64,000 nt of DNA, from positions 62,001 to 126,000 of the IMG/VR virus record IMGVR_UViG_3300036770_003943. One strand, given 5' to 3'. Position 1 is the stretch's first letter, and each line of letters starts with the position of its first letter. Below the pieces are notes generated by a model. It searched no databases. It was given only the letters and a program-made list of their open reading frames with translations, and was not told the DNA's origin. This document shows positions 13,947 to 54,583 of the stretch, one piece after another. A program made the translations under genes and the position numbers.

Positions 13947-13953
13947 TACTTAT
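13947..13953 (-). promoter_or_regulatory. variant late promoter ATAAGTA
   Basis: Upstream of the sulfotransferase RBS (GAGGA). Confidence 0.4.
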
Positions 13954-15078: not shown

Positions 15079-15119
15079 AAAAAAATCAGCTAGTACATTG
15101 TTTATTATACTAGCTGATT
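15079..15119 (-). terminator. Rho-independent terminator after RCC1 gene A
   Basis: 12-bp perfect stem AATCAGCTAGTA/TACTAGCTGATT (15084-15095/15108-15119) followed by a U-run on the minus strand (A7 at 15079-15085). Confidence 0.75.
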
Positions 15120-15143
15120 ATTTAGTTTAATGAAATGAAATTA

Positions 15144-18100
15144 CTAAATTGTTTTTAGTGTTACTGTTTGAGCACCACCTGCACTGGCTGTTAAGTGGTC
15201 GGTGTCGCTGCCAACTTGTACCGGACTACTACGAGTTGTAATTGTTCCATCACCTAGTTGCCCATTGGCGTTGTAACCCCAAGCATATAAATCTCCTGTG
15301 CTTCTAACACCCACTGTGTGCCAAGTACCAGCATCGACTGCGGTCCATGATCCAGAACCAACTTGTGTTGGGGCATCAGCATTTGTTGTAGTACCAAGTC
15401 CTAATTGTCCGTAGTTGTTTCTGCCCCAGGTATATAAACCACTATTAGTTTTAATACCTGCTGTGTGTTGATTGCCTGCGGTGATTGCGGTCCAACTTCC
15501 ACCGCCAGCTACTGCCACCGGACTACTGTAACTAGCTGGCTGCGGTCCAGTAATAGTTGTATTTTCAGCCGGGGTACCAGAACTTGCTAGATTACCGTCC
15601 ATTGGAAGATTGTTGTAATTACTCCAAGCATAAAGTTTACCAGTACTAGTAATGGCCCCATTCACTCCAAAGTGGGTAAAGGCGTTATGGCCTTTTGGTA
15701 CAGCAGTAAATGATACCCCCACAGCAAGCTGTACAGGACTATTTGAGCTGGAAGTATTGTTACCTATCGAACCAAACTGAGTTCTACCCCAAGCATACAA
15801 GGCACCGTCTGGTTGTATGCCTAATAATAATCTGCCTACATAACCAATTGCTGTCCAGCTATCTGTGCCTAACTTAGATAGTGTGTACTGAAAATTGACA
15901 TTATTTATAGTTTGAGTAAATCCTGAGTAATAAAGTTCGCCTGTCGAAGCTAATGCGGCCATACAGCCTATTGCACCTCCGCAGACTGCTGTAAAACTTT
16001 TACCTAAAGATGATCCAATTTGAACAGGACTTGATCTGTTAGTTGATGTGCTAGAAATTCCAATTCCTAAGGCAACACCGTAACCCATTCCCCATAATGT
16101 TCCGTCTGATTTGATAGCCATATTCGCAGCGTCTGAAGATCCAACTTGAATCCAATCGGTGTCTGTGCCTACCTGTACCGGAGTTAGACGGTCTGTGGTA
16201 TCATTATGACCTAATTGCCCTTTATGGTTTTTCCCCCATGTCCAAAGTGTTCCATCAGATTTAATTCCTATAGCACTTCCAGTACTAGCACCTTCACTGA
16301 TGCTTACAATCGACCAGCTTCCAGGCACTTGTGTTGGAGTCGAAACCGATAAGGTGTCACCAAGACCTAATTGTCCTGCGGCATTATTACCCCAGCCCCA
16401 TAAGGTTCCATTTGTTTTTATTGCAAATGCCTGATATTGACCTGAAATTATCTTACTCCAATCACTATCAGTTCCTATTAAGTTTGGCGAGTATCTATCA
16501 GTGGTAGTAATAGGAAGACCTAAATTGTTATAGCTGTTAAACATCGACCATCCCCATAGTCTGCCGCTAGTGGTTATTACGTGAATAGTATCATATTGTA
16601 CTCCAATTGCAGCAAAACTAGCTATGTCAGCTGGTCCAGCAACCTGTGTTGAATCATTTTTACCCCAAGCAAACAGTGTGCCATCTGACTTAATTGCTGC
16701 TGTATGACTACTACCGGCTGCTACTGCTGTCCAACTGCTAGTACCTACCTGTACTGGACTGCTTAAGTTTGTAGTATTTGCTTGTCCTAGTTGTCCAATG
16801 TTATTCAATCCCCAAGCAAACAGGCCGCCGTCCTTGCGTACTGCTACACTATGACTGCCACCAGCTGCTACAGCAGTCCAACTACTAGTGCCTATTTGTA
16901 CTGGGCTACTACGGCTAGTTGTTGTTCCATCACCTAGTCTACCTGTGCCGTTATTACCCCACACAAAAAGTCCGCCATCACTGCGAATGGCCATGCTGTG
17001 AGCATCACCTGCCGATACTGCTGTCCAACTGCTAGTGCCTACCTGTACTGGACTACTTTTTACTGCGCTGGTTCCATCTCCTAGCTGGCCCGAACTGTTA
17101 ACTCCCCAAGCATACAATGTTCCGTCACTGCGAATTGCCAATGTATGATTAGCACCAGTGCTAGCTGATTGCCAAGTTTCAGTGCCGAGTTTAACAGGAC
17201 TTGTTTGAGTTGAAGTTAAATTACCTCCCACTAGGTTTGGTAGCCAGTAGGCATTACCGGAAATTAGTTGGCCTGTATCGTTTATATTGCCGCTTAATCC
17301 ATATGATTCTAACCAACCCCATCCATATAATAAGCCGTCTGATTTAATACCAAAGGTATGTTTAGCATTTATATCAAGGGCATTTTGTCGAATAATAGTC
17401 CAACTACCTGAAATTTGAGTTGGATTACTATTCGCTGTAGTATTGCCTTGGGCTCCTTGACCGTATGAGCCTGCACCCATGTGATAGGCTGTACTGTTAG
17501 TTTTGATTAGATAATTTGCGTGTCTACCTGCTGATACTTTTTGCCAATCTGTATCTGTGCCCACTTGTGTTACTGTGGATCTTGCTGTGGTATCATTTAA
17601 TCCTAACTTCCCGTTAGTATTGTCTCCCCAGGACCATAATGTTCCGTCTGTTCTTACACCAATAGTATGATTAAAGCCTGATGCTATAGCTGACCAGCTT
17701 GCTGTACCTAACTGTACTGGACTAGATACTGATGTTGGTACTGTGCCTACTAGGCCAGTGGCGGTAGCAGTTGACCCGGAAGAGGTACCATCACCAAAAC
17801 TACCACTTATATTATATCCCCAATAATAACCAATTTTATCAGAACCTACAGCCCATCTTGGATTAGCAACATCAGTAAACCTGGTGCTTACTATCGTCCA
17901 GCTAGATGCACCAATCTGTATAGGACTAGTTATATTTTGACCGTAACTACCTGAGTCATCTCCGGTGTAATATGGAGTATAAAAATATCCCCATTTCCAC
18001 AATTTTCCATCAGTAGTGAGGCCGTTTACAGCAGTATAGATACTATTAACATCAGTAGTCGATCTGGCGGTGAATGCACCCACCATTGACCAACTTTTAG

Positions 18101-21100
18101 TATCATCGAGCAGTTGTGGGACAAACCTTCGCGTACGAGCATTTCTAAGCAGTTGACCGTACTCAGACTGACCCCAACCCCATAAACTTCCTACGCTATC
18201 AATAGCAAACGATTGCCATTTTGATGTGTAAGCACGAGTAAAAGTAGGTACACTATCTAATCGTGGACCATCGAGCCAATTAGATGAATTCGCTGAAGAA
18301 TTGTCATTTTTGCCAATATAAGCTCTTGTGGGTGTTGGAACATAATTTCCTTCTGGCCTTGATTGAGCAGGGAACGCACCAAAAATTACAGGATTTGAAA
18401 TATCTGGTTCAGTTGCGGTCAAAGCCCACTCAATCTCTCTACCAGTTGCTCTTGCTTGTGTGGTAAACCATAACACACCAGACTCTGACAGATATAATCC
18501 CATAGAAGGACGACCATATGTTGAATGTGTTCTTGTCGCACTAGCAAATTTCATAGTTGGCTGTGTTCCAATAGCAGCGAATGATGTAATTTGTACTGGG
18601 GTTGTACTACTAACAGGAAAATGTGGAACTACCGATCTTCCGCCCCAAGCCCACATTGTGCCATCTGTTTTAGTACCAATGGTGTGGGTTTCAAAATCAA
18701 CAAGACTATATCTGGGATTTGACTGACCAAGACTTACATGTTTCCAAGTATGTCCTCCCGAAACTAGTACAGGGCTATTCAGAGGAGTAGATGGGTAAGG
18801 ATAAGCATTACCATCACCTAGGCCGCCGCCTTTTCCGCAGCCCCACATATATAAGGAACCATCAGTTCTAATAGCTGCTGAGTGCGCTGCCCCTATGTAC
18901 ACTGCAGTCCAACTGTCTGTACCTACCTGTACTGGACTGCTACGAGCTGTAGTAGTTCCATCGGCTAATCTATTTCCGTATGTGGTACTAGTACCTGTTC
19001 CAGGTTTGCCCCAAGTAAATAGTCCGCCGTCACTACGAACAGCAGCACTAATGCCCATAGTACCGACCGAAATCCAGCTATCCGTGCCGATTTGTGTTGG
19101 ACTTGAACGGTTGGTTGTATCTCCTAATCCTAATTGTCCGACAACATTATTTCCCCACCCAAACAGTGCTCCGTCTGCTCTAATAGCTAAAACTGCGCCG
19201 AAACCAGTACCACTTGTATAACGATTATTACTAGTATGTTCTGTACCACCTATACTAAAGTCACGCCATTTGTCTGCGCCAATACGAGTTGGGGTAGTTG
19301 GGGTAGAAGCATCGTTTAGGCCTAGTTGTCCAAAGTTGTTCGTGCCCCAGCTGTACAGGGCTCCTTCCTCAGTAATACCGATATAGGCCGCATTGTGCTG
19401 CATTACTTTCTTGAAATTCAATGGTCCAGTATCAAATTTTATCAATACTGGACTATCTTTGTTCGAATACCAAACAGTTCCGTCATTTTTAACACCAAGA
19501 AATTGTAGATCACCAGCATCAACATGTTTCCAATAGTCGATAGTTCCTCCCACAGATGGCTGGTTTCTGTTTAATTCTGAAGTACCCCAGGTGTAAAGAT
19601 TTCCTCCTCGAATTCCTACGCTATGACTTGTTGCTGTGCTTATAGCCGTCCAGCTTTCATTGTAGGTGTTGATATTTGGTGTTGGTGTAGTATACACACG
19701 ATCCTCAGTATAAGCCCTGGCGACACCACCTCCCATGGCCCATAGTCTATTATATTCATCTATTAGGCAATTATAGTAGTCTCCAGGAACGAAGGGAGCT
19801 TTGGCGAATTTATATTTTCTAGTACCAATTTGTACAGGACTACTTCTCGAAACTGTATCTCCTAGCCCTAGTTCTCCTATACTGTTTTTACCCCAAGCCC
19901 ACGCATAGCCCGAGGAGTCAATGCCTAGAGCAGTGACAACACTAGGGTTACCACCGCCTATGCTAATCTGTACCCAACTGCCTGTACCTACCTGTACAGG
20001 ACTGCTTCGATCAGTGGTTGTTCCGTCACCTAAAATTCCGTCACTATTTTTACCCCAAGTAAATAAACCACCGTCAGCTCTAATAGCAGCTGAAGTTAAA
20101 TTTACTGTTGCTACTGACAGCCATTTATCAGATCCTACCTGTACAGGACTGCTTATGCTGGTAGTGTTTGCCAGACCTAATTGTCCTGAACTATTATTAC
20201 CCCAAGCCCATAATGCCCCAGCACTATCAATTGCCAATGTACTATCTGATATAGAAATAGCTGCCCAACTTCTTGTTCCTAATTGTACAGGGCTACTACG
20301 ATTTGTTTTGTCGTTCAAACCCAATGGGCCGTATGTAGTATTTCTACCCCAAACAAATAATGCGCCATCTGATCTAATAGCAGCAGAATTTAGATTTCCT
20401 GCAGAAACGCTTACCCAACTATTTCCTGTACCAATTTGAATAGGACTACTTTTTCCTGTGCCGACTGTAGTGCCATCACCAAGTTGGCCATCACTATTTT
20501 GTAAGTTTAATGACCAAGCCCATAGTGTTCCATCGTTTTTGATTCCTAGTGTGTGATTTCTGCCTGCTGATATTTGTTTAAAATTTGAAGCAAATAAGGC
20601 TGGACTAACATTTTTCAGTGTCCAAACTTCGCCATTTTCTTTTAGAATCATTGAATACACGTTCTGACCTTCTACAGTGGCATGAATAATGCCGCTTTCT
20701 TGAACCATAACCGGACTAGACGTGCTATCTCCAGCTAGTCCATTGGCTCTATTGGTACCTGAACCTGTTACAAAAAGTCTATTAGGTTTGCCCCCACTGC
20801 CACCGGCGTTAATATTTGGTGACGCCGATAATAAGAATGTGAATCCGTTACCGGCTGCTACTCCGTTGCTTAACCATTCACCTACGCTGCCGAACGCAGT
20901 TGGTACACTACGATTTGTTGTGTCTCCTAGTCCTAACTGCCCTGAACTGTTTAGTCCCCAAACATAAAATTGTGCGTTCATAGGATAATAAGCAAACACA
21001 TGTTTATTACCAACACTTAATGTTGAATAAAAATCACTGCCAACTTGAACAGGACTTGATCGGTTCGTTGTGTCTCCTAACCCAAGTTGTCCTTGATCAT

Positions 21101-21878
21101 TTAATCCCCAAGCATAGAGATATCCAAGTGTACTAGTAACACTAGTGATACCAAACGTACTACCGTAGGCTGACTCTAAAGCACGCCATTTGAGTGTAGC
21201 TGTAGCAGGCTGAGCTAATTGACTGCTGCCATTACTTCCCCAAACAAATAATTTTCCATCACTTCTGATACCTGTAGTATGACTTGCTCCTACGCTGACT
21301 GTAGTCCAACTACCTGTGATTGCTACTGGACTGCTACGATTGGTTGTATCAGTTAAACCTAAATTATATGTACTATTATTTCCCCAGAGAAATAATCTGC
21401 CTGCTGTGTCAATAGCAGCACTGGTAAAAAGATTAGCATGGACCATAGTCCAGCTGCTGGTCCCTACTTGTACTGGACTTGAGTAAGTAATAGTGTCATT
21501 AAGACCTAGCTGTCCTGAGCCATTAGCTCCCCAAGCAAACAGACCCCCGTCACTGCGTATGGCTACTGTATGGCTGTCACCTGTTGCTACTGAGGTCCAA
21601 CTATCAGAACCTATTTGTACTGGACTAAAATAATTTGTTGTTGTGTTTAATCCTAGCAAACCTAGGTTTCTGTGATATCCCCAAGTCCACAAGGTTCCAT
21701 CGTTACGAATGGCCGTAGCGTGCCATCTACCTGATGATATTGAAGACCAACTTTGTGCTGTATTAACTAATGAAGGATCCCCAAGTTCGCCGCTATTATT
21801 GTTACCCCATACATAGAGGAATTTTTCAATCGTAGTGGTTGCTGATGGTGCTGGGAATGATAATACAATATCTAACAT
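15144..21878 (-). CDS. giant RCC1/BLIP-II repeat beta-propeller protein A (2244 aa)
   Basis: Dozens of WGxNxxGQLGLGDTTxRSSPVQVG..W..V.AG..H repeats. Confidence 0.9.
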   Translation of the reverse strand: MLDIVLSFPAPSATTTIEKFLYVWGNNNSGELGDPSLVNTAQSWSSISSGRWHATAIRNDGTLWTWGYHRNLGLLGLNTTTNYFSPVQIGSDSWTSVATGDSHTVAIRSDGGLFAWGANGSGQLGLNDTITYSSPVQVGTSSWTMVHANLFTSAAIDTAGRLFLWGNNSTYNLGLTDTTNRSSPVAITGSWTTVSVGASHTTGIRSDGKLFVWGSNGSSQLAQPATATLKWRALESAYGSTFGITSVTSTLGYLYAWGLNDQGQLGLGDTTNRSSPVQVGSDFYSTLSVGNKHVFAYYPMNAQFYVWGLNSSGQLGLGDTTNRSVPTAFGSVGEWLSNGVAAGNGFTFLLSASPNINAGGSGGKPNRLFVTGSGTNRANGLAGDSTSSPVMVQESGIIHATVEGQNVYSMILKENGEVWTLKNVSPALFASNFKQISAGRNHTLGIKNDGTLWAWSLNLQNSDGQLGDGTTVGTGKSSPIQIGTGNSWVSVSAGNLNSAAIRSDGALFVWGRNTTYGPLGLNDKTNRSSPVQLGTRSWAAISISDSTLAIDSAGALWAWGNNSSGQLGLANTTSISSPVQVGSDKWLSVATVNLTSAAIRADGGLFTWGKNSDGILGDGTTTDRSSPVQVGTGSWVQISIGGGNPSVVTALGIDSSGYAWAWGKNSIGELGLGDTVSRSSPVQIGTRKYKFAKAPFVPGDYYNCLIDEYNRLWAMGGGVARAYTEDRVYTTPTPNINTYNESWTAISTATSHSVGIRGGNLYTWGTSELNRNQPSVGGTIDYWKHVDAGDLQFLGVKNDGTVWYSNKDSPVLIKFDTGPLNFKKVMQHNAAYIGITEEGALYSWGTNNFGQLGLNDASTPTTPTRIGADKWRDFSIGGTEHTSNNRYTSGTGFGAVLAIRADGALFGWGNNVVGQLGLGDTTNRSSPTQIGTDSWISVGTMGISAAVRSDGGLFTWGKPGTGTSTTYGNRLADGTTTARSSPVQVGTDSWTAVYIGAAHSAAIRTDGSLYMWGCGKGGGLGDGNAYPYPSTPLNSPVLVSGGHTWKHVSLGQSNPRYSLVDFETHTIGTKTDGTMWAWGGRSVVPHFPVSSTTPVQITSFAAIGTQPTMKFASATRTHSTYGRPSMGLYLSESGVLWFTTQARATGREIEWALTATEPDISNPVIFGAFPAQSRPEGNYVPTPTRAYIGKNDNSSANSSNWLDGPRLDSVPTFTRAYTSKWQSFAIDSVGSLWGWGQSEYGQLLRNARTRRFVPQLLDDTKSWSMVGAFTARSTTDVNSIYTAVNGLTTDGKLWKWGYFYTPYYTGDDSGSYGQNITSPIQIGASSWTIVSTRFTDVANPRWAVGSDKIGYYWGYNISGSFGDGTSSGSTATATGLVGTVPTSVSSPVQLGTASWSAIASGFNHTIGVRTDGTLWSWGDNTNGKLGLNDTTARSTVTQVGTDTDWQKVSAGRHANYLIKTNSTAYHMGAGSYGQGAQGNTTANSNPTQISGSWTIIRQNALDINAKHTFGIKSDGLLYGWGWLESYGLSGNINDTGQLISGNAYWLPNLVGGNLTSTQTSPVKLGTETWQSASTGANHTLAIRSDGTLYAWGVNSSGQLGDGTSAVKSSPVQVGTSSWTAVSAGDAHSMAIRSDGGLFVWGNNGTGRLGDGTTTSRSSPVQIGTSSWTAVAAGGSHSVAVRKDGGLFAWGLNNIGQLGQANTTNLSSPVQVGTSSWTAVAAGSSHTAAIKSDGTLFAWGKNDSTQVAGPADIASFAAIGVQYDTIHVITTSGRLWGWSMFNSYNNLGLPITTTDRYSPNLIGTDSDWSKIISGQYQAFAIKTNGTLWGWGNNAAGQLGLGDTLSVSTPTQVPGSWSIVSISEGASTGSAIGIKSDGTLWTWGKNHKGQLGHNDTTDRLTPVQVGTDTDWIQVGSSDAANMAIKSDGTLWGMGYGVALGIGISSTSTNRSSPVQIGSSLGKSFTAVCGGAIGCMAALASTGELYYSGFTQTINNVNFQYTLSKLGTDSWTAIGYVGRLLLGIQPDGALYAWGRTQFGSIGNNTSSSNSPVQLAVGVSFTAVPKGHNAFTHFGVNGAITSTGKLYAWSNYNNLPMDGNLASSGTPAENTTITGPQPASYSSPVAVAGGGSWTAITAGNQHTAGIKTNSGLYTWGRNNYGQLGLGTTTNADAPTQVGSGSWTAVDAGTWHTVGVRSTGDLYAWGYNANGQLGDGTITTRSSPVQVGSDTDHLTASAGGAQTVTLKTI

Positions 21879-21965
21879 AATTTGGCTCCGATTTAGATTA
21901 ATAGTATTTAGCTAAATCGAAGCCATGTCAATTAAATTAAACTGTTTTTAGTGTAATTGTATGAG
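21846..21965. repeat. 120-bp identical block spanning gene B end, intergenic region and gene A start (copy 1; copy 2 at 27493-27612)
   Basis: Direct comparison, offset 5647. Confidence 0.9.
21884..21924 (-). promoter_or_regulatory. RBS-occluding hairpin with late promoter (CTAAATA, 21905-21911) in the loop
   Basis: Minus strand GGCTTCGATTTAG-15 nt-CTAAATCGGAGCC: 13-bp stem with one G-U; GGAG RBS is in the 3' arm. Confidence 0.75.
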
Positions 21966-24900
21966 TACCGCCAGCGCTGGCTGTCAAGTGGTCAATATCA
22001 CTACCTATCTGTACTGGACTGCTGCGAGTAGTAGTTGTTCCATCACCTAGTTGCCCATTGGCGTTGTAACCCCACGCATATAAACGGTTCGTACTTCTAA
22101 CTCCCACAGTATGCCAGTTACCAGCTTCAACAACAGTCCATGAACCAGTGCCAACTTGTACTGGACTACTAGTATCAACTAAATCATTGAGTCCTAGTTG
22201 TCCGTAGTTGTTTCGTCCCCAAGCATACAATAATTTATTTGTACGAATACCAGCTGTGTGCTGATTGCCTGCGGTGACTAAGGTCCAACTATCTGCTCCC
22301 ACTTGTACTGGGCTACTTAGGTTTGTTGTATTCGATAAGCCTAACTGTCCAACATTGTTTAATCCCCAAGCAAACAGGCCGCCATCACTGCGTACAGACA
22401 CAGTATGTGATGCACCGGCTGCTACTGAGGTCCAACTGTCTGCTCCCACTTGTACTGGGCTACTTAGGTTTGTTGTATTCGATAAGCCTAACTGTCCAAC
22501 ATTGTTTAATCCCCAAGCAAACAGGCCGCCGTCCTTGCGTACTGCTACACTATGACTGCCACCAGCTGCTACAGCAGTCCAACTATCTGCTCCCACTTGT
22601 ACTGGGCTACTACGAGATGTAGCTGTTCCGTCACCTAGTCTACCTGTGCCGTTATTACCCCACACAAAAAGACCGCCATCACTACGAATGGCTACAGTAT
22701 GAGCATCACCTGCTGATACTGCTGTCCAACTACTAGTGCCTATTTGTACTGGGCTACTACGAATAGTAGTATCACCAAGACCTAATTGACCGGAACTGTT
22801 TAATCCCCAAGCATACAATGTTCCATTTGTTCTGATAGCGACAGTATGATTAGCTCCAGCACTAGCTGCTTTCCAAACATCAGTTCCTAGCTTACTAGTC
22901 GACGAAGATGTAGTAGCAAGGGCTCCACCTACTTTGTTTGGTGTCGTATAAGCACTACCTGAGCTTAAAGTACCCACATCTGCAGGTTCTCCGCTTACAC
23001 CACCAGCACCAGTGCCTAGCCACCCCCAAGCATACATTAAATTATCAGACTGGATACCAAATGTGTATTCTCGAATAGGGGAATATCCTGCATCTTGACC
23101 TTTTACTAAAATCCAACTAGCAGAACCTAATTGTACTGGGCTGCTACGATTAGTTGTATCGCCCAATCCCAATTGGGCTTGATTGTTTGATCCCCATACA
23201 TATAAAGCTCCATCGGTGTTGATTGCCATAGTACCATATCCATTTGCGCTTAATTTTTGCCAATTTGTTAGGCCGCCCACCTGTGTTGGAGTTGAAACTG
23301 CTGTAGTATTACCCAATCCTAGTTGACCAGAACTGTTTGATCCCCAGGTATATAGTGTGCCATTAGATTTAATACCAACACTATGCGACATACCTGCTGC
23401 TACAGCAGTCCAGCTGTCTGTGCCAAATTGTACTGGACTAAGTTCACTAGTAGAAGCCACCCCAATTAAAGGAGATCTAGCACCAACGCTTGCTGTAACA
23501 TTTATACCTAATTCTCCAGAACCATTAGTTCCAAAGCCTTCAGCTACACCAGTTGTACCCAATAAAAATACAGTGCCCGTGTGGGACGAAGAAATCATAG
23601 TATAGCTGGATCCTGTTCCTAGTTGTATAGGACTAGTAGTGCCTCCGGCGTATTCTGTGGCAATGCCCATCATGCCATAACCCCTAGCTCCCCAAGCAAA
23701 TGCCTGGCCATCTGTTGTGATTCCAATGGCTGTGGGATGAGTATAAGGACTAGAAGATCTAGATCTTATATTAATTTTGCTAAATGTTTTATCTGCTTGC
23801 GTTATTTGAAAATGTGGGTAAGCATAATAAAAACTATTTCCCAGAACACCATAATTACCAGCCCGTCCTGTAATATAGGCTTTACCAGTCGAACTTAATG
23901 CCAATAAATTTTGTTTAGCAGCACTTACCATAGTAAAGCTAGTAGTATCATTAGGATCGAATATTAAATTAGTTCCGCCGAAAACACTTTGATCTTGAGT
24001 AGTTGCCATTGGATACATTCGTCTTGGACTAATGTTTTGCGTTCTAAAACCACCTAAAATTGTTGGACTTGATACTTCACTTTGCCTACTTTCATATGTA
24101 ATAATTCCAGCACGACCCATCCAATACGCATAACCGTTTGGCTCATGAAACACCACTTGTTCAACTTGGCCTTGTCCAGAAATGCTTCTAATTTGTGCTA
24201 GTACTGGGCTACCTACTATGTTAATTTGAACCGGTGTAGCACCATACGGACTACTACTTTGTAACCTAGACCCCCATGCCCATAGTGTATTATCGCTTTT
24301 TACAGCATAAGTCATATGGCCGTTACTGGTCCAGCCTGTTCTTGTTGCCTTGACCGCTACCCAACTATCGGAGCCTATTTGTACCGGGCTCGATCTAGCA
24401 GCACCTCCATCACCTAAAGCACTATCTCCCCACGTAAACAATGCTCCGTCTGATCTAATGGCTGCTGCGTGTCTTTCCATGATAGAAACCGCAGTCCATG
24501 TACTTGCTCCAACTTGAACTGGACTTGACCGAGTTGTTGTATCATTTATACCTAGTTGACCATGTCGATTATCACCCCAGGCCCATAATGTACCATTAGA
24601 TTGTAGAGCCATAGTCCCGAGAGCCATAGAAATCATAGTATAGCTGGCTGTACCTACTTGTACAGGACTACTTACTGACGAAGTATCTCCTAACCCTAAC
24701 TGTCCTTGACTGTTAGCTCCCCAAGTAAATAATGCTCCGTCTTTTCTGATCGCTGCTGATTGTTTTACCGGGGGGTAAGGATATCCTGTATCAAATGTAT
24801 TCCCCCCAGTATAAACTTTTTCCCAGTTGTCATTTCCTACTTGAACCATGGTAGCTTGAGAAGTTGTATTTCCTAAGCCTAATTGTCCTTGATCATTGTT

Positions 24901-27525
24901 TCCCCATGCCCACAGTTTATCATATTGATCGATGGCAAAATAATAATCGAACCAACCAGCTGCTATATATTTGAATGTTTTTCCTGGTGTTGATTTTTGT
25001 GTTAAAGGTTTATTACTATATGAAGCTTCCCATATAGTTCCATCACTTTTCAAACCCATAAAATACCAATAGGCGCCATTTATTCTACCAGTAAATTCAA
25101 TCTGTTTCCATCTTTCTAAACCGTCAGAAAATACTTCATAATTTTCGCCAGTAACTTTACTATTGCCCCATGCGTATAGTTTTGAGTCATATAAAGCTAA
25201 AGTTTTGTCGTTGGCAGCAGATATAGCTGTCCAAGATTTAGTGGCAATAGGCATAGGAAATCTACCATAAGTTGCCACAGTTGGGCTTGTCCATGTTCCT
25301 AATCGATAACTTCCTGTTATGTGCCCAGCTGTTCCCCAAGCATGTAAAACCCCGGTATGATCAATGGCATATCCACCGCACCTTGTAGCATCTTCAACAA
25401 ACACTGATTTGGCTGCTTTTTTCCAAGTTTTTGTACCGGCACTGCCAACTAATCTAGGACTACTACTAAAATCTACACTTTCGTCCCATCCTAAATTTTG
25501 TGCTGTAGAATCATTTAATCCCCATGCCCATAACTGTCCAGATGTATCTATAGCAAATCCTCCATATGGATTCGAACCTATAGACACCCAACTTCCACCT
25601 CCGCTGATAGATGTTGGACTACTAGTATTGGACGTACCGCCGTTGCCCAATCTTCTAAAAGATCCAGTACCCCACGACCATGCTGTCCAATCATTTCTTA
25701 GTGCTATTGTGTGTTGGGGGCCGCCCACAAACTCAAGCCATTTATCCGATCCTAGCTGTACTGGGCTACTCAGGTCGGTGGTGTTACCTAATCCTAATTG
25801 TCCGTAATTATTTCTACCCCAAGCAAATGTAGCACCATCATTTTTTAAAGCAAATACAATACTGCGATTTGCGTCAGCAACTATATTAGCATATATTTTA
25901 TTCCAATCCGTCCCTGCTCCTATTTGTACTGGGCTTGAAGCATTTGTAGCTGAATTGTTACCAATATCAGTACCTAATCCCCAACCCCATAATGTTCCAT
26001 TAGTCCTAACTCCCCAGGTATTACTGTCTCCTGCTGTAAAATCTCGCCACGAGCCTGCGAGTTGTGTAGGTGTGCTTACGTTACTACCTCCTAAGCCCAG
26101 TCTGCCTGTTGTGTTATCTCCCCAAACCCAAGCTGTTTCATCGTGCTTCAGTGCTGTGGCATGTAATTTCCCTAGTGATATTTTTTTCACATTTGTAAAG
26201 GCCGGAATTTGTGTTGGTACACTTCTATCAGTGGTATCACCTAAACCCAATTTACCATTTGTATTTTTACCCCATGCCCATACCGTCCCATCGCTGTGAA
26301 GAGCCATAGTATAATCTGTACTACCTTCTATGCTAACAAATCCTGGTTCACCTACTATGCTTGCCTTACTCATTGTTGATCCGCCAAGACCACTGGCCAT
26401 ACTGGTACCTGCTCCAAATGCCAACAACTGACCTAGACTATTTTTGGCTATAGTATAATTTTCGCCGCAGGTTACATCAGCAATTGTTTGTGTTATCGAA
26501 GCTACACTGGCCAAAGCAACCGGACTGCTACGATTGGTTGTGTCGGATAATCCTAACTGACCGCTGGAATTCAATCCCCAAGTATACAAAACGTTTCCGG
26601 CTAGCGCAGCCATAAATTGATTACCTACACGTACTTTTGTCCAGTTTGTATTTGATCCTACCTGCTGAGGTGTGCTATAAGAAGTAGTATTTCCTAACCC
26701 TAATTGTCCTGCGGCATTATTACCCCAAGTGTACAATTTTCCGTCATTGGTAATACCTATTGAACTTGCATAATTTGTAGATATTTCTGTCCAACTTAAT
26801 GTTGGGGGAGCAGGATACGCTGCTTGACCTCCTGCGTTGCTACCCCATGTAAATAGTGCGCCATCGCTGCGAATAGCCAAAGTATGATTAAATCCTGATG
26901 CTATAGCTGTCCAACTAGCAGTACCAACTTGTACTGGACTACTACGATTAGTTGTGTCTCCCAAACCAAGTTGCCCTTGATCATTTAATCCCCAAGTAAA
27001 CAGGCCGCCGTCGGCTCTAATAGCCATAACTGAATTTTTTCTACCATTGGATGCCACTGCTGTCCAACTACTAGTGCCAATCTGTACTGGGCTACTAAAA
27101 CTTGAAGAGCCGGATGTACCTTGTCCCAATTGACCATGAAGGTTATTTCCGCCCCAAGCCCATAATGTACCATCATTTCTAATAGCAATGAACCATGTCC
27201 CTGATGCTGACCCTGTGCCTGAGCCTACACCGCCTCCTGTTATAGCAGTCCAACTACTAGTGCCTATTTGTACTGGACTGTTACGACTAGTAGTAGTTCC
27301 ATCACCTAGGCCACCGTTGCTACCATTTCCCCAGGTCCATAATGTACCGTCTGTTTTAATTGCTGCTGCTACTTGGTTTCCTAGTGCTACAGCAGTCCAG
27401 CTTTGTGCTGTATTAATTATACTAGGATCACCTAACTGACCATAGCGATTAGATCCCCATACATACATGAACTTTTCTATAGTTGTAGCCGCTGGTGCTG
27501 GGAATGATAATACAATATCTAACAT
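21937..27525 (-). CDS. giant RCC1/BLIP-II repeat beta-propeller protein B (1862 aa)
   Basis: Same repeats; same MLDIVLSFPAP N-terminus. Confidence 0.9.
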   Translation of the reverse strand: MLDIVLSFPAPAATTIEKFMYVWGSNRYGQLGDPSIINTAQSWTAVALGNQVAAAIKTDGTLWTWGNGSNGGLGDGTTTSRNSPVQIGTSSWTAITGGGVGSGTGSASGTWFIAIRNDGTLWAWGGNNLHGQLGQGTSGSSSFSSPVQIGTSSWTAVASNGRKNSVMAIRADGGLFTWGLNDQGQLGLGDTTNRSSPVQVGTASWTAIASGFNHTLAIRSDGALFTWGSNAGGQAAYPAPPTLSWTEISTNYASSIGITNDGKLYTWGNNAAGQLGLGNTTSYSTPQQVGSNTNWTKVRVGNQFMAALAGNVLYTWGLNSSGQLGLSDTTNRSSPVALASVASITQTIADVTCGENYTIAKNSLGQLLAFGAGTSMASGLGGSTMSKASIVGEPGFVSIEGSTDYTMALHSDGTVWAWGKNTNGKLGLGDTTDRSVPTQIPAFTNVKKISLGKLHATALKHDETAWVWGDNTTGRLGLGGSNVSTPTQLAGSWRDFTAGDSNTWGVRTNGTLWGWGLGTDIGNNSATNASSPVQIGAGTDWNKIYANIVADANRSIVFALKNDGATFAWGRNNYGQLGLGNTTDLSSPVQLGSDKWLEFVGGPQHTIALRNDWTAWSWGTGSFRRLGNGGTSNTSSPTSISGGGSWVSIGSNPYGGFAIDTSGQLWAWGLNDSTAQNLGWDESVDFSSSPRLVGSAGTKTWKKAAKSVFVEDATRCGGYAIDHTGVLHAWGTAGHITGSYRLGTWTSPTVATYGRFPMPIATKSWTAISAANDKTLALYDSKLYAWGNSKVTGENYEVFSDGLERWKQIEFTGRINGAYWYFMGLKSDGTIWEASYSNKPLTQKSTPGKTFKYIAAGWFDYYFAIDQYDKLWAWGNNDQGQLGLGNTTSQATMVQVGNDNWEKVYTGGNTFDTGYPYPPVKQSAAIRKDGALFTWGANSQGQLGLGDTSSVSSPVQVGTASYTMISMALGTMALQSNGTLWAWGDNRHGQLGINDTTTRSSPVQVGASTWTAVSIMERHAAAIRSDGALFTWGDSALGDGGAARSSPVQIGSDSWVAVKATRTGWTSNGHMTYAVKSDNTLWAWGSRLQSSSPYGATPVQINIVGSPVLAQIRSISGQGQVEQVVFHEPNGYAYWMGRAGIITYESRQSEVSSPTILGGFRTQNISPRRMYPMATTQDQSVFGGTNLIFDPNDTTSFTMVSAAKQNLLALSSTGKAYITGRAGNYGVLGNSFYYAYPHFQITQADKTFSKINIRSRSSSPYTHPTAIGITTDGQAFAWGARGYGMMGIATEYAGGTTSPIQLGTGSSYTMISSSHTGTVFLLGTTGVAEGFGTNGSGELGINVTASVGARSPLIGVASTSELSPVQFGTDSWTAVAAGMSHSVGIKSNGTLYTWGSNSSGQLGLGNTTAVSTPTQVGGLTNWQKLSANGYGTMAINTDGALYVWGSNNQAQLGLGDTTNRSSPVQLGSASWILVKGQDAGYSPIREYTFGIQSDNLMYAWGWLGTGAGGVSGEPADVGTLSSGSAYTTPNKVGGALATTSSSTSKLGTDVWKAASAGANHTVAIRTNGTLYAWGLNSSGQLGLGDTTIRSSPVQIGTSSWTAVSAGDAHTVAIRSDGGLFVWGNNGTGRLGDGTATSRSSPVQVGADSWTAVAAGGSHSVAVRKDGGLFAWGLNNVGQLGLSNTTNLSSPVQVGADSWTSVAAGASHTVSVRSDGGLFAWGLNNVGQLGLSNTTNLSSPVQVGADSWTLVTAGNQHTAGIRTNKLLYAWGRNNYGQLGLNDLVDTSSPVQVGTGSWTVVEAGNWHTVGVRSTNRLYAWGYNANGQLGDGTTTTRSSPVQIGSDIDHLTASAGGTHTITLKTV
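22292..22530. repeat. tandem duplication of one RCC1 blade: 92-bp identical copies at 22292-22383 and 22439-22530 (period 147 nt = 49 aa)
   Basis: Direct comparison. Confidence 0.85.
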
Positions 27526-27612
27526 AATTTGGCTCCGATTTAGATTAATAGTATTTAGCTAAATCGAAGCCATGTCAATTAAATTAAACTGTTTTTAGTG
27601 TAATTGTATGAG
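27493..27612. repeat. 120-bp identical block (copy 2 of 21846-21965)
   Basis: Direct comparison. Confidence 0.9.
27531..27571 (-). promoter_or_regulatory. RBS-occluding hairpin with late promoter in the loop (identical to 21884-21924)
   Basis: Identical sequence; TAAATA at 27552-27557. Confidence 0.75.
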
Positions 27613-30600
27613 CACCGCCAGCACTAGCTGTCAAGTGGTCAATATCACTACCTATCTGTACTGGACTGCTGCGAGTATCCACTGTTCCATCACCAAGCTG
27701 GCCGTCATAGTTATATCCCCAAGCATAGAGTGCTCCTGTACTTCTAACTCCCACAGTATGCCAAGTACCAGCTTCGACAGCAGTCCATGAACCAGTGCCA
27801 ACTTGTGCTGGACTACTAGTATCAACTAAATCATTGAGTCCTAGTTGTCCGTAGTTGTTTCGTCCCCAAGCATATAAAATACTGTTTTTGGTAATGCCGG
27901 CTGTGTGCTGATTGCCTGCGGTGACTAAGGTCCAACTATCTGCTCCCACTTGTACTGGACTACTACGAGATGTAGTTGTTCCATCACCTAGTCTACCTGT
28001 GCCGTTATTACCCCATGCAAATAGTGCGCCATCACTACGAATAGCTACATTATGAGATCCACCAGCCGCAATTGCTGTCCAACTATCTGTACCTATTTGT
28101 ACTGGACTTGAACGAACAGTTGTATTACCTTGCCCTAGTTGTCCTGAAGTGTTTATACCCCAAGCAAAAAGACTGCCGTCACTACGTAAAGCTAAACTAT
28201 GGGTTCCGCCTGCCGAAATTGCTGTCCAACTACTAGTGCCTATTTGTACTGGGCTACTACGAGATGTAGCTGTTCCGTCACCTAGTCTACCTGAGCCGTT
28301 ATTACCCCAAGTAAACAGTCCGCCATCACTACGAATAGCCATGCTGTGAGCATCACCTGCTGATACTGCTGTCCAACTACTAGTGCCTACTTGTACTGGA
28401 CTTGAAAGATATGTTGTATTACCTTGTCCTAATTGTCCTGAACTATTATTACCCCAAGTAAACAGTGTGCCATCACTGCGAATGGCTAGGGTATGACTAG
28501 CACCAGCACTAGCTGCTATCCACGTGTCTGATCCTAATTTTATCGGGGTTTTTATAACAGACAGAGAATTTCCAACTAAGTTAGGTAATGTGTAAACAGC
28601 ACCACCTTGTAATTGTCCTAGGTCAGATGTGTTTCCGCTTAATCCATATGATTCTAACCAACCCCATCCATATAATAGGCCGTCTGATTTAATACCAAAA
28701 ACATTTTTAACGTTAGTCCGTAGTGGGTTTACTTTCATCATCGTCCAACTACCTGGAATTTGAGTAGGAGTGCTATTACTACTTTCATTTCCTATCCCCG
28801 ATTGGCCGTAAGTGCCTTGCCCTACATGATAGGCTGTGCCATTAGTTTTGATTAGATAATTTGCGTTTCTACCTGCTGATACTTTTTGCCAATCTGTATC
28901 TGTACCTATTTGTGTTATTAGGGATCTTGCTGTGGTATCACCTAATCCTAACTTCCCGTTAGTATTGTCTCCCCAACCCCACAATGTGCCATTAGTTTTG
29001 ATGCCTAATGTATGATTAACACCTGCCGAAACTGTGGTCCAACTAGCTGTACCCAACTGTTCTGGAGTTGTAGCTCGTGAAAGAGATAATGCTGTAATAG
29101 TTCCGATTCCGCTTGTAGATGTGCTGTTGTTAGTGCCCAATTGTCCGTAATTGTTGTATCCCCAATAATGACCAATTTTGTCTGTAGATATGGCCCACCT
29201 ACTGGCATAGTTTGAAAAATTAAATCTAGTACCAACTGCTAGCCAACTTTGACTTGAGCCGATTTGAACAGGACTCGAACTAGGATGCAGGGGTGCTGAT
29301 GTGCCATCACCTGTAAAATTATTCGCGCGGAGCCACCCCCATCTCCACAATTTTCCATCTGTAGTTATTCCATTTACACCAACGGCTCGACCATAACCAG
29401 CGGTATTGGAAGACGTAAATCCACCTATCATAGACCAGCTCTTAGTTGTATCAATTTGTTGAGGGATAAAGTAACGATAATACTCGTATGCAGGTTTAAA
29501 TAATTCACTTCCGTAACTACTGCCCCACCCCCATAGACTTCCTGCGTTATCAATAGCAAAACATTGCCATAATGATGCGTAAGCACGAGTAAAAGTAGGT
29601 ACACTATCCAATCGCGGGCCATCGGGCCAATTCCAAACGAAACTGGCACTATTGTCATTTTTGCCAATATAAGCTCTGGTGGGTGTTGGAACATAATTTC
29701 CGTCTGGCCTTGATTGAGCAGGGAACGCACCAAAAATTACAGGATTTGAAATAACATTATTGCCACCGGTGTCCCATTCAGTCTCTCTGCCAGTTGCTCT
29801 TTGTTGACTGTTAAACCATAACACACCAGACTCTGACAGATATAAACCCATAGCCTCGGCATCATAACCGCTATTTGTCCTTGATATACTAGCAAATTTC
29901 ATAGTTGGTTGTGTTCCAATAGCAGCAAATGATGTAATTTGTACTGGGGTTGTACTAGCTCCACTAGGAAACCATGATTGTTCTCCTCTCGCGCCCCATA
30001 TCCAAATTGTACCATCTGTTTTAGTACCAACAGTTCGTGTTCCAAAACTAGTATTGCTATATCTCCAATTCGACTGACCAAGACTTACATGTTTCCAAGT
30101 ATGTCCCCCAGCAACTAAAACTGGACTGCTAGTATTAGTCGTTGTTCCGTCACCCAAACCTCCAAGACGATTTAAGCCCCACATATATAAGGAACCATCA
30201 GTTCTAATAGCTGCCGAATGTGCTGCCCCTATGTACACTGCAGTCCAACTGTCTGTACCTACCTGTACTGGACTGCTACGAGCTGTAGTAGTTCCGTCAC
30301 CTAATTGATTGCCAGTACTGGCAGTAACTTTAGGTTTACCCCAAGTAAATAGTCCGCCGTCACTACGAACAGCAGCACTAATGCCCATAGTACCTACCGA
30401 AATCCAGCTATCCGTGCCGATTTGTGTTGGACTTGAGCGATTAGTTGTATCTCCTAATCCTAATTGTCCGACAACATTATTTCCCCACCCAAACAGTGCT
30501 CCGTCTGCTCTAATAGCTAAAACTGCGCCGTAACCAGTACCCGAAACATGAAAACTAACATCATTATGTTCTGTACCACCTATACTAAAGTCACGCCATT

Positions 30601-33223: not shown

Positions 33224-33251
33224 AATTTGGCTCCATAAATCACTTTACTAA

Positions 33252-33259
33252 TATTTATA
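33252..33259 (-). promoter_or_regulatory. T4 late promoter TATAAATA (perfect consensus)
   Basis: Exact consensus upstream of RBS GGAG and ATG 33223. Confidence 0.8.
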
Positions 33260-33261
33260 AA

Positions 33262-33289
33262 AATTAAAACCCCTTAAAGGGGTTTTTTT
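33262..33289 (-). terminator. Rho-independent terminator (possibly bidirectional)
   Basis: AAAACCCCT-TAA-AGGGGTTTT 9-bp inverted repeat at 33266-33286. Confidence 0.75.
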
Positions 33290-45266: not shown

Positions 45267-45313
45267 ACTCTCCTAGGGATTTAGCTTGTACTATTTACCT
45301 AAATTCTAAGAGT
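45267..45313 (-). promoter_or_regulatory. late promoter GTAAATA (45292-45298) inside an RBS-occluding irregular hairpin
   Basis: Minus strand ACTCTT AG A ATTTAG [GTAAATAGTACAAG] CTAAAT CC CT AG GAGAGT. Confidence 0.6.
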
Positions 45314-45329: not shown

Positions 45330-45734
45330 TTAGATTTTAATAAAGTCTACCCGAGCAGTCCAATTAAGTGTAGCACTGGATATTCCTGAAACTCCTATGC
45401 TCATGAGACCTGATGTATTGAAACTAATCGTCGGAGCAGGGATGGTAGATGTATTAACAAATGTGTTAGTAACTGCCCCGCTAACACCACTTACACCTGA
45501 CAAATAACAACCTTTTATTTCAAATGCTCCAGTTTGGCCGCCGCTGGCTTGACAAACAATATAAGCAGTAAAAAACACAGTACCTGATGCAGTGTACTGA
45601 TTACCTTCTCTATCTACTAAAGTTGTAGACCCTGTGTTTACAGTAGTACCACTGTGAGTAATAGATTCTGTTTTTGATCCAATTGAGAATGTATCAACTG
45701 TTGTGCCGTGTAGTTTTAGAAAAGTATTTGCCAT
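45330..45734 (-). CDS. hypothetical beta-rich structural protein
   Basis: 134-aa ORF with its own late promoter (ATAAATA at 45740-45746). Confidence 0.7.
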   Translation of the reverse strand: MANTFLKLHGTTVDTFSIGSKTESITHSGTTVNTGSTTLVDREGNQYTASGTVFFTAYIVCQASGGQTGAFEIKGCYLSGVSGVSGAVTNTFVNTSTIPAPTISFNTSGLMSIGVSGISSATLNWTARVDFIKI

Positions 45735-45739
45735 AATAT

Positions 45740-45746
45740 TATTTAT
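45740..45746 (-). promoter_or_regulatory. late promoter ATAAATA
   Basis: Motif immediately upstream of ATG 45734 (possibly a leaderless transcript). Confidence 0.5.
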
Positions 45747-50678: not shown

Positions 50679-50685
50679 TATTTAT
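50679..50685 (-). promoter_or_regulatory. late promoter ATAAATA
   Basis: Directly after the capsid terminator, immediately upstream of ATG 50673. Confidence 0.6.
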
Positions 50686-54510: not shown

Positions 54511-54583
54511 ATTTCTCCTTTTGGCCAAAAGTGGTCTTGTCTGTAATTATATTTACAGTATTGACTAATTATCTAGGAGAAAT
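54511..54583 (-). promoter_or_regulatory. late promoter GTAAATA (54550-54556) between an anti-RBS and the RBS
   Basis: 9-bp perfect inverted repeat ATTTCTCCT (54511-54519) / AGGAGAAAT (54575-54583). Confidence 0.55.

What the first reader, a model, noticed from the sequence alone, without database searches (positions are those of the whole stretch)
21884..21924. Late promoter nested in an RBS-sequestering hairpin (identical copies at 21884 and 27531)
Seen: a 13-bp stem buries GGAG, and the loop holds CTAAATA. The junction also forms the perfect palindrome ATTTAGCTAAAT. Known: T4 genes e, 49, soc and I-TevI use the same logic, where long transcripts are translationally silent and late-promoter transcripts lack the 5' arm. 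Inference: each downstream RCC1 paralogue is translated only from its own promoter, not from read-through, allowing independent stoichiometry or silencing of individual adhesins.
Basis: partly seen in the sequence, partly recalled or inferred. Interest (0 to 1): 0.62.

Follow-up and report, generated by a model that had tools for sequence, protein, structure and literature searches.

The report
Promoter-in-hairpin switch between RCC1 genes
Between three giant tandem RCC1-repeat genes of an uncultured 232-kb T4-related jumbo phage sits a 120-base cassette, present twice, in which a strong RNA hairpin buries the ribosome-binding site and carries a promoter in its loop; this is the switch known from T4 lysozyme and I-TevI, so it is a good new example of a known trick, not a new mechanism.

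Summary
On the minus (coding) strand a 13-bp stem (12 Watson-Crick pairs plus one G.U) pairs 21912-21924 with 21884-21896. It buries GGAG (21886-21889) 7 nt before the ATG. The 15-nt loop holds CTAAATA. An identical copy lies 5647 nt away.

The T4-like reading is well supported in silico:
- TAAATA is the most enriched hexamer upstream of genes in this genome.
- A gp55-type late sigma gene is present.
- The first paralogue has TATAAATA at the homologous position, with no hairpin.
- An unrelated gene (start 45261) carries the same ATTTAG-N-TAAATA-N7-CTAAATC...GGAG design.

Three qualifications apply:
- The two copies are one duplicated 120-nt tract, not independent evidence.
It ranks just behind the phage's own early promoters, and the whole cassette matches the description of a T4-type PeSL (promoter-early stem-loop).
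- No transcription start or translation data could be obtained. "Independent stoichiometry" and "adhesins" remain inference.

Verdict: real, non-chance, and most likely a promoter-in-hairpin translational insulator. It is a new member of a known kind.

The parts
21912..21924 (-). 5' arm of the hairpin (anti-Shine-Dalgarno strand), copy 1. It lies in the spacer of the sigma-70-like promoter and upstream of the predicted start sites.
   Evidence: Sequence; fold.
21897..21911 (-). 15-nt loop, copy 1. It holds CTAAATA (21905-21911), read as a gp55-type late promoter core. The predicted start is about 21899-21896.
   Evidence: The start site is inferred from the T4 rule of about 6 nt after TAAATA, not measured.
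21884..21896 (-). 3' arm, copy 1, containing the Shine-Dalgarno GGAG (21886-21889). ATG is at 21876-21878.
   Evidence: P(unpaired) of GGAG is 0.00 in a read-through RNA model.
21903..21931 (-). Sigma-70-type promoter-like site: TTGACA (21926-21931), 17-nt spacer, AATACT (21903-21908), with an AT-rich TTTAA stretch upstream.
   Evidence: 10 of 12. A weight matrix built from 12 canonical early promoters ranks it 14th-15th of about 463,000 positions at 16.1 bits.
27531..27571 (-). Copy 2 of the whole hairpin, upstream of RCC1 gene B (ATG 27525). CTAAATA is at 27552-27558 and TTGACA at 27573-27578.
21846..21965 (-). 120-nt tract perfectly identical to 27493-27612. This is the duplicated or converted cassette, and its two copies flank gene B as direct repeats.
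15144..21878 (-). RCC1-repeat gene C (2244 aa), downstream of hairpin copy 1.
21937..27525 (-). RCC1-repeat gene B (1862 aa), downstream of hairpin copy 2. Its stop codon (21937-21939) lies 12 nt before the 5' arm of copy 1.
27584..33223 (-). RCC1-repeat gene A (1879 aa), first of the array.
33231..33286 (-). Control region of gene A: intrinsic terminator (33266-33286), TATAAATA (33252-33259), and the same GGAG-N7-ATG. There is no stable anti-SD arm (-3 kcal/mol).
45270..45312 (-). Independent cassette of the same design upstream of gene 42556-45261. A 7-bp lower stem pairs GGAG, the upper stem is ATTTAG/CTAAAT, and the loop is G-TAAATA-N7.
   Evidence: pattern found 3 times against 0.04 expected; -10.4 kcal/mol.
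15084..15125 (-). After gene C, ACTAAATA (15119-15125) abuts a 14-bp terminator hairpin followed by a T-run. Transcripts from this promoter would lack most of the terminator's 5' arm.

Best explanation
The 58-nt spacers A/B and B/C each carry a promoter-in-hairpin translational insulator of the T4 e / soc / 49 / I-TevI type.

Proposed mechanism:
- RNA that enters from upstream contains both arms. No terminator separates A, B and C. The 13-bp helix forms and buries the Shine-Dalgarno GGAG of the next gene, so 30S subunits bind poorly.
- RNA polymerase that starts inside the element begins in the 3' part of the loop, about 21899-21896 (27546-27543 in copy 2). It would be directed by the gp55-type late sigma at CTAAATA, and possibly also by host sigma-70 at TTGACA-17-AATACT.
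- That transcript lacks the 5' arm, so its 21-nt leader carries a free GGAG.
- Each downstream RCC1 gene is therefore translated mainly from its own transcript.

Shown: the helix, its stability, the motifs, their genome-wide enrichment, the late sigma gene, and the homologous promoter of paralogue A.

Inferred: the start sites, the existence of read-through RNA, the translational block, and its purpose. The likely purpose is uncoupling B and C from A, or keeping them silent on any early read-through.
For: (1) Helix. It folds at -24.3 kcal/mol with z = -6.4, and -16.8 kcal/mol for the stem-loop alone. GGAG has P(unpaired) 0.00 in a 210-nt read-through model, against 0.84-0.96 for paralogue A, which has no arm.

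(2) Promoter.
- TAAATA is the most enriched hexamer in upstream intergenic DNA on the coding strand: 64 of 221 genome occurrences, 9.8-fold.
- CTAAATA is 6.8-fold enriched.
- TAAATA sites cluster 14-31 nt before start codons.
- A gp55 homologue is encoded (E 8.9e-9 to T4 gp55; PHROG 'sigma factor for late transcription' 6e-78).

(3) Paralogue A has a perfect TATAAATA 28 nt before the same GGAG-N7-ATG, against 26 nt in B and C.

(4) Independent recurrence.
- The gene starting at 45261 has ATTTAG-G-TAAATA-N7-CTAAATC. Its lower stem is different but again pairs its own GGAG.
- Genome-wide, complementarity between the 30 nt upstream of TAAATA and the leader is in excess: 8 sites at -12 kcal/mol or lower against 2.9 expected, p = 0.006, duplicate removed. 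The RCC1 junction is the strongest.
- Clear further cases lie at genome positions 182350, 225262, 56146, 54431 and 24522.

(5) The stem's single imperfection is a U.G wobble, which pairs only in the sense RNA. Sense folds are more stable than antisense in 9 of 11 leaders folded, 8 of the 10 with a hairpin.

(6) The hairpin is not a terminator, because no U-run follows it. The upstream stop codon is 12 nt before the stem, so by the known ribosome footprint a terminating ribosome should not open it (inference).

(7) As a positive control, the same folding reproduces the T4 e and 49 arrangements, which the literature describes.
Against: - There are no transcript-end, expression or ribosome data.
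- No relative carries this junction, so there is no covariation test for this helix.
- The two copies are one duplicated tract.
- CTAAATA is a minority variant. ATAAATA is the preferred form: 59% of its genome copies are upstream of genes, against 20% for CTAAATA.
- The genome-wide excess of anti-SD pairing is modest. A weaker excess is also seen at genes without TAAATA (20 against 13, p = 0.03).
- In related phages the excess is weak: 8 against 3.4 at -14 kcal/mol, and none at -12.
- The upstream transcript would itself be late, so the T4 rationale of blocking early translation does not transfer directly.
- In the short-transcript model the GGAG is only partly open.
Confidence: 0.55

Rival explanations
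1. PeSL-type cassette. The element is primarily an early, sigma-70-driven promoter plus stem-loop module like the PeSLs of RB49, phi1, T4 and KVP40. Its main roles would be transcriptional insulation and serving as a roughly 100-bp homology patch for recombination that duplicates, deletes or swaps the flanked gene. Coverage of the RBS by the 3' arm and the TAAATA in the -10 region would be secondary.
For: - TTTAATTGACA-N17-AATACT ranks 14th-15th of about 463,000 genome positions against a matrix built from the phage's 12 canonical early promoters. It is the best such site outside the early clusters.
- Two perfect 120-nt copies flank gene B as direct repeats.
- The paralogues are mosaics of 94-98% identical patches.
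- Other early promoters of this phage also carry stems in the spacer or terminators just upstream.
Against: - The first base of the -10 hexamer is A, where all 12 canonical promoters have T.
- The genes are giant virion-module genes, not small early ORFans.
- The stem is AT-rich with no G/C tracts and no U-run, so it is unlikely to terminate.
- The same-design cassette at 45270-45312 has no TTGACA.
- Paralogue A has only the late motif.
- No variant genomes were found to show recombination at the cassette.
Confidence: 0.2
2. RNA processing or stability element. The hairpin, with its weaker outer helices, would be an endonuclease site or a 3'-end protective stem-loop for the upstream giant mRNA. 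The promoter-like motifs would be incidental in AT-rich DNA.
For: - The MFE structure extends to about 26 pairs with internal loops spanning stop codon to start codon.
- Intergenic hairpins commonly stabilise phage mRNAs (general knowledge).
Against: - The outer helices are weak A-U pairs.
- This does not explain why the 3' arm is exactly the SD.
- It does not explain why TAAATA sits at the same distance as in paralogue A.
- It does not explain why the design recurs with a different SD-pairing lower stem.
- No Rfam family matches.
Confidence: 0.1
3. DNA-level site. The 13-bp inverted repeat and the perfect 12-bp palindrome ATTTAGCTAAAT over the promoter would be an operator for a dimeric regulator, or a cruciform that helps promoter melting. 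There would be no RNA role.
For: - There is a perfect palindrome overlapping the promoter core.
- ATTTAG-N-TAAATA occurs 3 times against 0.04 expected.
- I-TevI sets a precedent for an operator over a late promoter.
Against: - The palindrome follows automatically from the loop starting with the same CTAAAT as the 3' arm.
- At 45292-45304 the centre is not palindromic.
- The wobble pair works only in sense RNA.
- The lower stems differ between cassettes but both pair the SD.
Confidence: 0.07
4. No function. The hairpin would be a by-product of a recent duplication or gene conversion in repeat-rich DNA.
For: Both copies derive from one event. The region is full of repeats.
Against: - z = -6.4 for a single copy.
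- Zero changes in 120 nt are followed by 14% divergence.
- The SD, the promoter motif and the arm are in exact functional register.
- There is an independent analogue at 45270-45312.
Confidence: 0.05

Closest known systems
T4 late-promoter / RBS-sequestering hairpins (genes e, soc, 49, I-TevI; also segB and Aeh1 mobE)
   Same: - A stable helix buries the Shine-Dalgarno sequence.
- A gp55-type promoter of the TAAATA family sits inside the hairpin or next to its 5' strand, so promoter-proximal transcripts lack that strand.
- In T4 e the proximal TATAAATA occupies the top of the stem and the loop, as it does here.
   Different: - In T4 the silenced RNAs are early or middle transcripts of late genes embedded in early regions. 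Here the upstream unit is itself a late virion-module gene of the same family, so the switch would separate tandem late cistrons.
- The promoter is the variant GCTAAATA.
- A sigma-70-type promoter overlaps it.
- The phage is only distantly T4-related (major capsid protein 65-69% identical to PA5oct-like jumbo phages).
- Nothing here has been measured.
PeSL (promoter-early stem-loop) cassettes of T4-type phages (Arbiol et al. 2010, PMC2839356; Comeau et al. 2014, PMC4122927)
   Same: - AT-rich stretch, -35 box, stem-loop lying in the spacer and over the -10 box, SD and ATG at the 3' end.
- About 100-bp conserved unit.
- Repeated copies flank a variable gene.
   Different: - PeSL stems are often G/C-rich and are shown terminators. 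This stem has no U-run.
- PeSLs flank small early ORFans in hyperplastic regions. These copies flank a 5.6-kb RCC1 gene in the structural block.
- The -10 departs from consensus at its first base and doubles as a late-promoter core.
Terminator-promoter composites in this same phage
   Same: At genome positions 225262 and 56146, and in the window at 15084-15125, TAAATA lies in or against a hairpin. Its own transcript would therefore escape that hairpin.
   Different: Those hairpins are followed by U-runs, so they are transcription terminators. The RCC1 junction hairpin is not, and would have to act on translation.

Membership tests
T4-type late-promoter/RBS-hairpin switch | A stable RNA helix includes the Shine-Dalgarno sequence and/or the start codon. 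| tested here: met
   A 13-bp stem covers GGAG. It folds at -16.8 kcal/mol alone and -24.3 in context, z = -6.4. GGAG has P(unpaired) 0.00.
T4-type late-promoter/RBS-hairpin switch | A gp55-dependent late promoter (TATAAATA family) is placed so that its transcript lacks the 5' strand of the helix. | tested here: inconclusive
   At the motif level this is met. CTAAATA is in the loop, the TAAATA core is 9.8-fold enriched upstream of genes, gp55 is present, and there is a homologous TATAAATA in paralogue A. The start site itself was not mapped.
T4-type late-promoter/RBS-hairpin switch | Longer transcripts from upstream promoters run through the element. | not testable with these tools
   No terminator-like site lies at either junction, so read-through is expected. 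No RNA data are available.
T4-type late-promoter/RBS-hairpin switch | Translation is repressed on long RNAs and active on short RNAs. | not testable with these tools
   This needs toeprinting, reporter fusions or ribosome profiling.
PeSL cassette | A sigma-70 consensus-like promoter with an AT-rich upstream stretch. | tested here: met
   TTGACA-17-AATACT scores 10 of 12. It ranks 14th-15th of about 463,000 positions against the phage's own early-promoter matrix. The -10 first base deviates from consensus.
PeSL cassette | A stem-loop lies between -35 and -10 or over the -10, with SD and ATG at the 3' end. | tested here: met
   The 5' arm (21912-21924) lies in the spacer. The loop holds the -10. 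The 3' arm holds the SD.
PeSL cassette | The stem-loop is an effective transcription terminator or attenuator. | tested here: not met
   There is no U-run after the stem and the stem is AT-rich. The terminator scan does not call it. Function was not measured.
PeSL cassette | Many dispersed copies bracket small ORFans in hyperplastic regions and mediate recombination. | tested here: inconclusive
   Only two identical copies exist, flanking one giant gene. No variant genomes were found.
Intrinsic (Rho-independent) terminator | A G+C-rich stem immediately followed by a U-run. | tested here: not met
   AAATTATG follows on the sense strand. There is no adjacent T-run on the other strand either.
Described RNA family (Rfam 15) | A match at or above the gathering score. 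| tested here: not met
   The only hit is a chance-level miRNA-precursor hairpin match: 25 bits against 80 required, E 0.96.

The most novel reading that the evidence does not exclude
The 120-nt cassette would be a dual-class module with three overlapping features: a host sigma-70 early promoter, a gp55 late promoter and an RBS-masking hairpin. Phage recombination would use it, PeSL-style, to duplicate, delete and swap whole 5-7-kb RCC1 fibre genes. In that reading the same element both insulates the expression of each giant paralogue and drives cassette shuffling of a host-recognition gene array in a structural module.
Probability: 0.15. Interest if true: 0.65.

Novelty: new member of a known kind. 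Interest (0 to 1): 0.4.

Why it matters
If confirmed, three things would follow.
- The T4 "promoter inside an RBS-masking hairpin" device would extend to a distant, uncultured jumbo-phage lineage.
- It would show that the device can separate tandem late genes from one another, not only early from late expression.
- It would give annotators a practical rule: in such phages, a TAAATA in the loop of an SD-pairing hairpin marks a transcription-unit boundary.

The overlap with an early-type promoter and the PeSL-like layout also suggest how giant repeat-protein genes near the tail-fibre genes could be duplicated and exchanged. That bears on host-range evolution.

The mechanism itself is textbook T4 biology, so the gain is breadth rather than principle.

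Tried and rejected
- **Relatives of the junction.** An exact or degenerate hairpin pattern and a back-translated N-terminus found nothing in IMG/VR. The back-translated N-terminus also found nothing in the metagenome contigs. The 35 RCC1 loci from IMG/VR are distant (58% or less) and have no comparable junction. The closest genomes by capsid (87-91%) have no RCC1 genes. No covariation test of this helix was therefore possible.
- **Covariation in another gene.** I tried the analogous anti-SD/TAAATA/SD arrangement upstream of the gene starting at 54507, across 22 relatives. The upstream regions are too heterogeneous. Some relatives have clear anti-SD arms, the closest one has none, and some lack TAAATA. 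I make no claim from this.
- **Clade-wide excess of TAAATA-flank complementarity** in 80 related loci. It is weak: 8 against 3.4 at -14 kcal/mol and none at -12.
- **Homologues of the 901-aa gene.** The promoter is kept (GATAAATA) but the hairpin is not.
- **Rfam.** Nothing.
- **Terminator reading.** Rejected, because there is no U-run.
- **Translational coupling by a terminating ribosome.** Judged unlikely from the 12-nt gap between the stop codon and the stem. This is inference only.
- **Tandem RCC1 genes in known phages.** In S-SRM01 the RCC1 genes are small and tightly packed with no such spacer.

Full report
**Context.** The window is bases 62001-126000 of a single 231,776-bp virus contig. 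IMG/VR classes it as linear and about 65% complete. Its major capsid protein is 65-69% identical to those of PA5oct-like, Serratia BF-like and Sinorhizobium Phosso jumbo myoviruses. Metagenomic relatives reach 91%.

Almost all genes in the window run on the minus strand and belong to a virion module: major head protein, tail-fibre and baseplate-like proteins.

Three tandem giant genes are each built of about 20 RCC1 blades:
- A: 27584-33223.
- B: 21937-27525.
- C: 15144-21878.

Pfam RCC1 and RLD E-values reach 1e-274. A and C are 72% identical as proteins, A and B 47%. RCC1-like proteins are known from other jumbo phages; phAPEC6 has eleven. In the cyanophage S-SRM01 they sit beside the long-tail-fibre gene. 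A fibre or adhesin role is plausible but unshown.

**The observation.** Read on the coding strand, the 58-nt spacer between B and C contains:
- a 13-nt 5' arm (21924-21912);
- a 15-nt loop (21911-21897) that begins with CTAAATA;
- a 13-nt 3' arm (21896-21884) that contains GGAG (21889-21886);
- a 7-nt spacer and then ATG (21878).

Twelve pairs are Watson-Crick and one is a U.G wobble. The palindrome ATTTAGCTAAAT is real. It arises because the loop opens with the same CTAAAT hexamer that opens the 3' arm.

The RNA folds at -24.3 kcal/mol in an 80-nt context. Shuffles give -8.9 +/- 2.4 (z = -6.4), and none of 200 folds as well. The stem-loop alone is -16.8 kcal/mol. It is one of the strongest local inverted repeats in 64 kb.

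The copy upstream of B (27531-27571) is identical. However, the two copies lie inside one 120-nt tract of perfect identity (21846-21965 = 27493-27612), beyond which divergence jumps to 51 mismatches in 360 nt. They are therefore one duplicated or converted unit and not two independent observations. The sharp contrast with the flanks shows either very recent conversion or constraint.

**Is CTAAATA a promoter?** I called genes on the whole genome and compared upstream intergenic DNA on the coding strand with the whole genome.
- TAAATA is the most enriched hexamer: 64 of its 221 genome occurrences lie in 13.7 kb of such DNA, a 9.8-fold enrichment.
- ATAAATA is 20-fold enriched. GTAAATA and CTAAATA are about 7-fold enriched.
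- The sites cluster 14-31 nt before start codons. A second group lies exactly 5 nt before ATG.
- The genome encodes a homologue of the T4 late sigma factor gp55 (E 8.9e-9 by protein search). It matches the PHROG family 'sigma factor for late transcription' at 6e-78.
- Paralogue A is preceded by an intrinsic terminator. It carries a perfect TATAAATA 28 nt before an identical GGAG-N7-ATG. In B and C the TAAATA lies 26 nt before it.

The heptamer in the loop thus occupies the homologous promoter position. By the T4 rule (start about 6 nt after the motif; established knowledge, and see PMC3014915), the transcript would begin near 21899. It would lack the whole 5' arm.

The phage's early promoters are sharply defined: TTAATTGACA, a 17-nt spacer, then TATACT or TATAAT, often followed by ATAGGTATAG. 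They cluster at genome positions 40-41.5 kb and 176-180.5 kb.

The RCC1 junction reads TTTAATTGACA, 17 nt, AATACT (21931-21903). A weight matrix built from 12 canonical early promoters ranks the two junction copies 14th and 15th among about 463,000 positions. That is behind eleven of the twelve training sites and two further sites in the early cluster, and ahead of one training site.

The one serious flaw is A instead of the invariant T at the first position of the -10 hexamer. That same change creates TAAATA.

The 5' arm of the hairpin is the -35/-10 spacer. A sigma-70 start would also fall at the 3' end of the loop. Whichever polymerase form is used, the element's own transcript lacks the anti-SD arm.

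**Does the architecture recur?** Yes, moderately.
- For 45 non-redundant genes with a TAAATA 12-60 nt upstream, I computed the best duplex between the 30 nt upstream of the motif and the leader, and compared it with all mismatched pairings.
- Eight sites reach -12 kcal/mol or lower against 2.9 expected (permutation p = 0.006). The RCC1 junction is the extreme case at -21.5 (an earlier version is).
- Genes without TAAATA show a weaker excess (20 against 13, p = 0.03), so the association is not exclusive.
- The clearest other cases are at genome starts 182350 (12-bp stem from SD to AUG, with GATAAATA in the loop), 225262 and 56146 (stem plus U-run, so terminators with the promoter in the loop and the SD in the 3' arm), 54431, 24522 and 49018.

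The most telling case lies in the window, upstream of the 901-aa gene 42556-45261. The hairpin at 45270-45312 has the same upper stem (ATTTAG/CTAAAT) and the same loop plan (N-TAAATA-N7). Its lower stem is different but again pairs its own GGAG through a U.G wobble (-10.4 kcal/mol). It has no TTGACA. The pattern ATTTAG-N-TAAATA occurs three times in the window against 0.04 expected.

Sense-strand folds are more stable than antisense folds in 9 of the 11 leaders folded, and in 8 of the 10 that carry a hairpin. That fits an RNA-level role.

**Positive control and literature.** Folding the T4 e and 49 leaders with the same script gives SD-containing hairpins with the late promoter in the loop or 5' arm.

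The reviews state that in e, soc, 49 and I-TevI the SD and/or AUG are sequestered on long transcripts. Lysozyme synthesis is reduced about 100-fold. [quoted passage not shown] The same arrangement holds for I-TevII, I-TevIII, segB and Aeh1 mobE (PMC2988022).

**What the hairpin is not.**
- It is not an intrinsic terminator. No U-run follows it on either strand, and the terminator scan does not call it, although that scan does call the terminators before A and after C.
- No Rfam family matches.
- Translational coupling seems unlikely. The stop codon of the upstream gene ends 12 nt before the stem, just outside the reach of a terminating ribosome. This is inference from known footprints.

**Comparison with PeSLs.** Arbiol et al. 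and Comeau et al. describe PeSLs in T4-type phages as follows:
- cassettes of about 100 bp with an AT-rich stretch and a strong sigma-70 promoter;
[quoted passage not shown] - copies that bracket variable genes and recombine with each other.

The RCC1 cassette fits this anatomy closely, and two perfect copies flank gene B as direct repeats. It differs in three ways: the stem is not terminator-like, the flanked gene is a giant virion-module gene, and the -10 is a late-promoter core. I therefore keep PeSL as the main rival or complement, not as the filing.

**Mechanism and confidence.** I commit to a promoter-in-hairpin translational insulator (0.55).
- Read-through RNA from A (or B) folds the helix and masks the next gene's SD.
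- RNA started in the loop is open. The start would be by gp55-polymerase, and perhaps also by sigma-70-polymerase.

Shown: anatomy, stability, motif statistics, the late sigma gene, the homologous promoter of paralogue A, and an independent analogue.

Inferred: start sites, read-through, the translational effect and the purpose.

Because the upstream unit is itself late, the likely benefit is uncoupling the yields of B and C from A, or silencing them on stray early read-through. It is probably not classic early/late timing.

**What failed.**
- No relative carries this junction.
- Comparative tests on two other genes were uninformative.
- The clade-wide signal is weak.

**Verdict.**
- This is a new member of a known kind.
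- Interest is 0.4.

The least ordinary reading still open is a dual early/late promoter-hairpin cassette that also mediates shuffling of giant RCC1 genes. I give it a probability of about 0.15.

Noticed in passing
window 45740-45745 (gene 45330-45734) and 50679-50684 (gene 48130-50673); five more elsewhere in the genome: TAAATA lies exactly 5 nt before ATG at seven genes. By the T4 spacing rule the transcript would start at or next to the A of the start codon, giving possible leaderless late mRNAs.
   Followed up: no
genome (G000:C1) 40120-41519 and 176416-180451, outside the window: There is a sharply defined early promoter class: TTAATTGACAcaaa, 17-nt spacer, TATACT or TATAAT, often followed by ATAGGTATAG. 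Several have a terminator just upstream or a stem in the spacer, which is PeSL-like. Some are followed by a TAAATA, giving tandem early and late promoters.
   Followed up: partly
window 15084-15125, minus strand: After RCC1 gene C, ACTAAATA abuts a 14-bp terminator hairpin with a T-run. Transcripts from this promoter would lack most of the terminator's 5' arm and so read on into gene 13953-15062. Read-through from C would stop.
   Followed up: partly
window 54511-54583, minus strand: There is a long-range anti-SD arrangement: ATTTCTCCT (54575-54583), TAAATA (54550-54555), then AAGGAGAAAT (54511-54520) before ATG 54507. This suggests the gene starts at that ATG rather than at the TTG at 54528 listed by the ORF tool. 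Relatives are heterogeneous.
   Followed up: partly
window 19235-19454 vs 30565-30784; 18839-18977 vs 30175-30313; 21036-21127 vs 32378-32469: Patches of 94-98% identity lie between RCC1 genes C and A, inside otherwise 60-75% identical DNA. This mosaic pattern suggests repeated gene conversion among the paralogues. A 147-nt (49-aa blade) periodicity runs throughout.
   Followed up: no
window 63898-64000 and beyond (genome 125898-126755, minus strand): The gp55-type late sigma factor gene (285 aa, PHROG 12791 at 6e-78) runs off the end of the window. It is longer than T4 gp55 (185 aa).
   Followed up: partly
window 59980-60022: A perfect 15-nt inverted repeat with a 13-nt loop lies between a plus-strand gene (58872-59714) and a minus-strand gene (60466-60894). 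It may be a bidirectional terminator.
   Followed up: no
window 21937-22836 (C-terminal 299 aa of gene B): The best matches among deposited phages are freshwater cyanophages: BUCT-ZZ01 at 51% and S-SRM01 at 40%. In S-SRM01 small RCC1 genes sit next to the long-tail-fibre distal subunit gene. The capsid of this phage, by contrast, groups with PA5oct-like jumbo phages.
   Followed up: no
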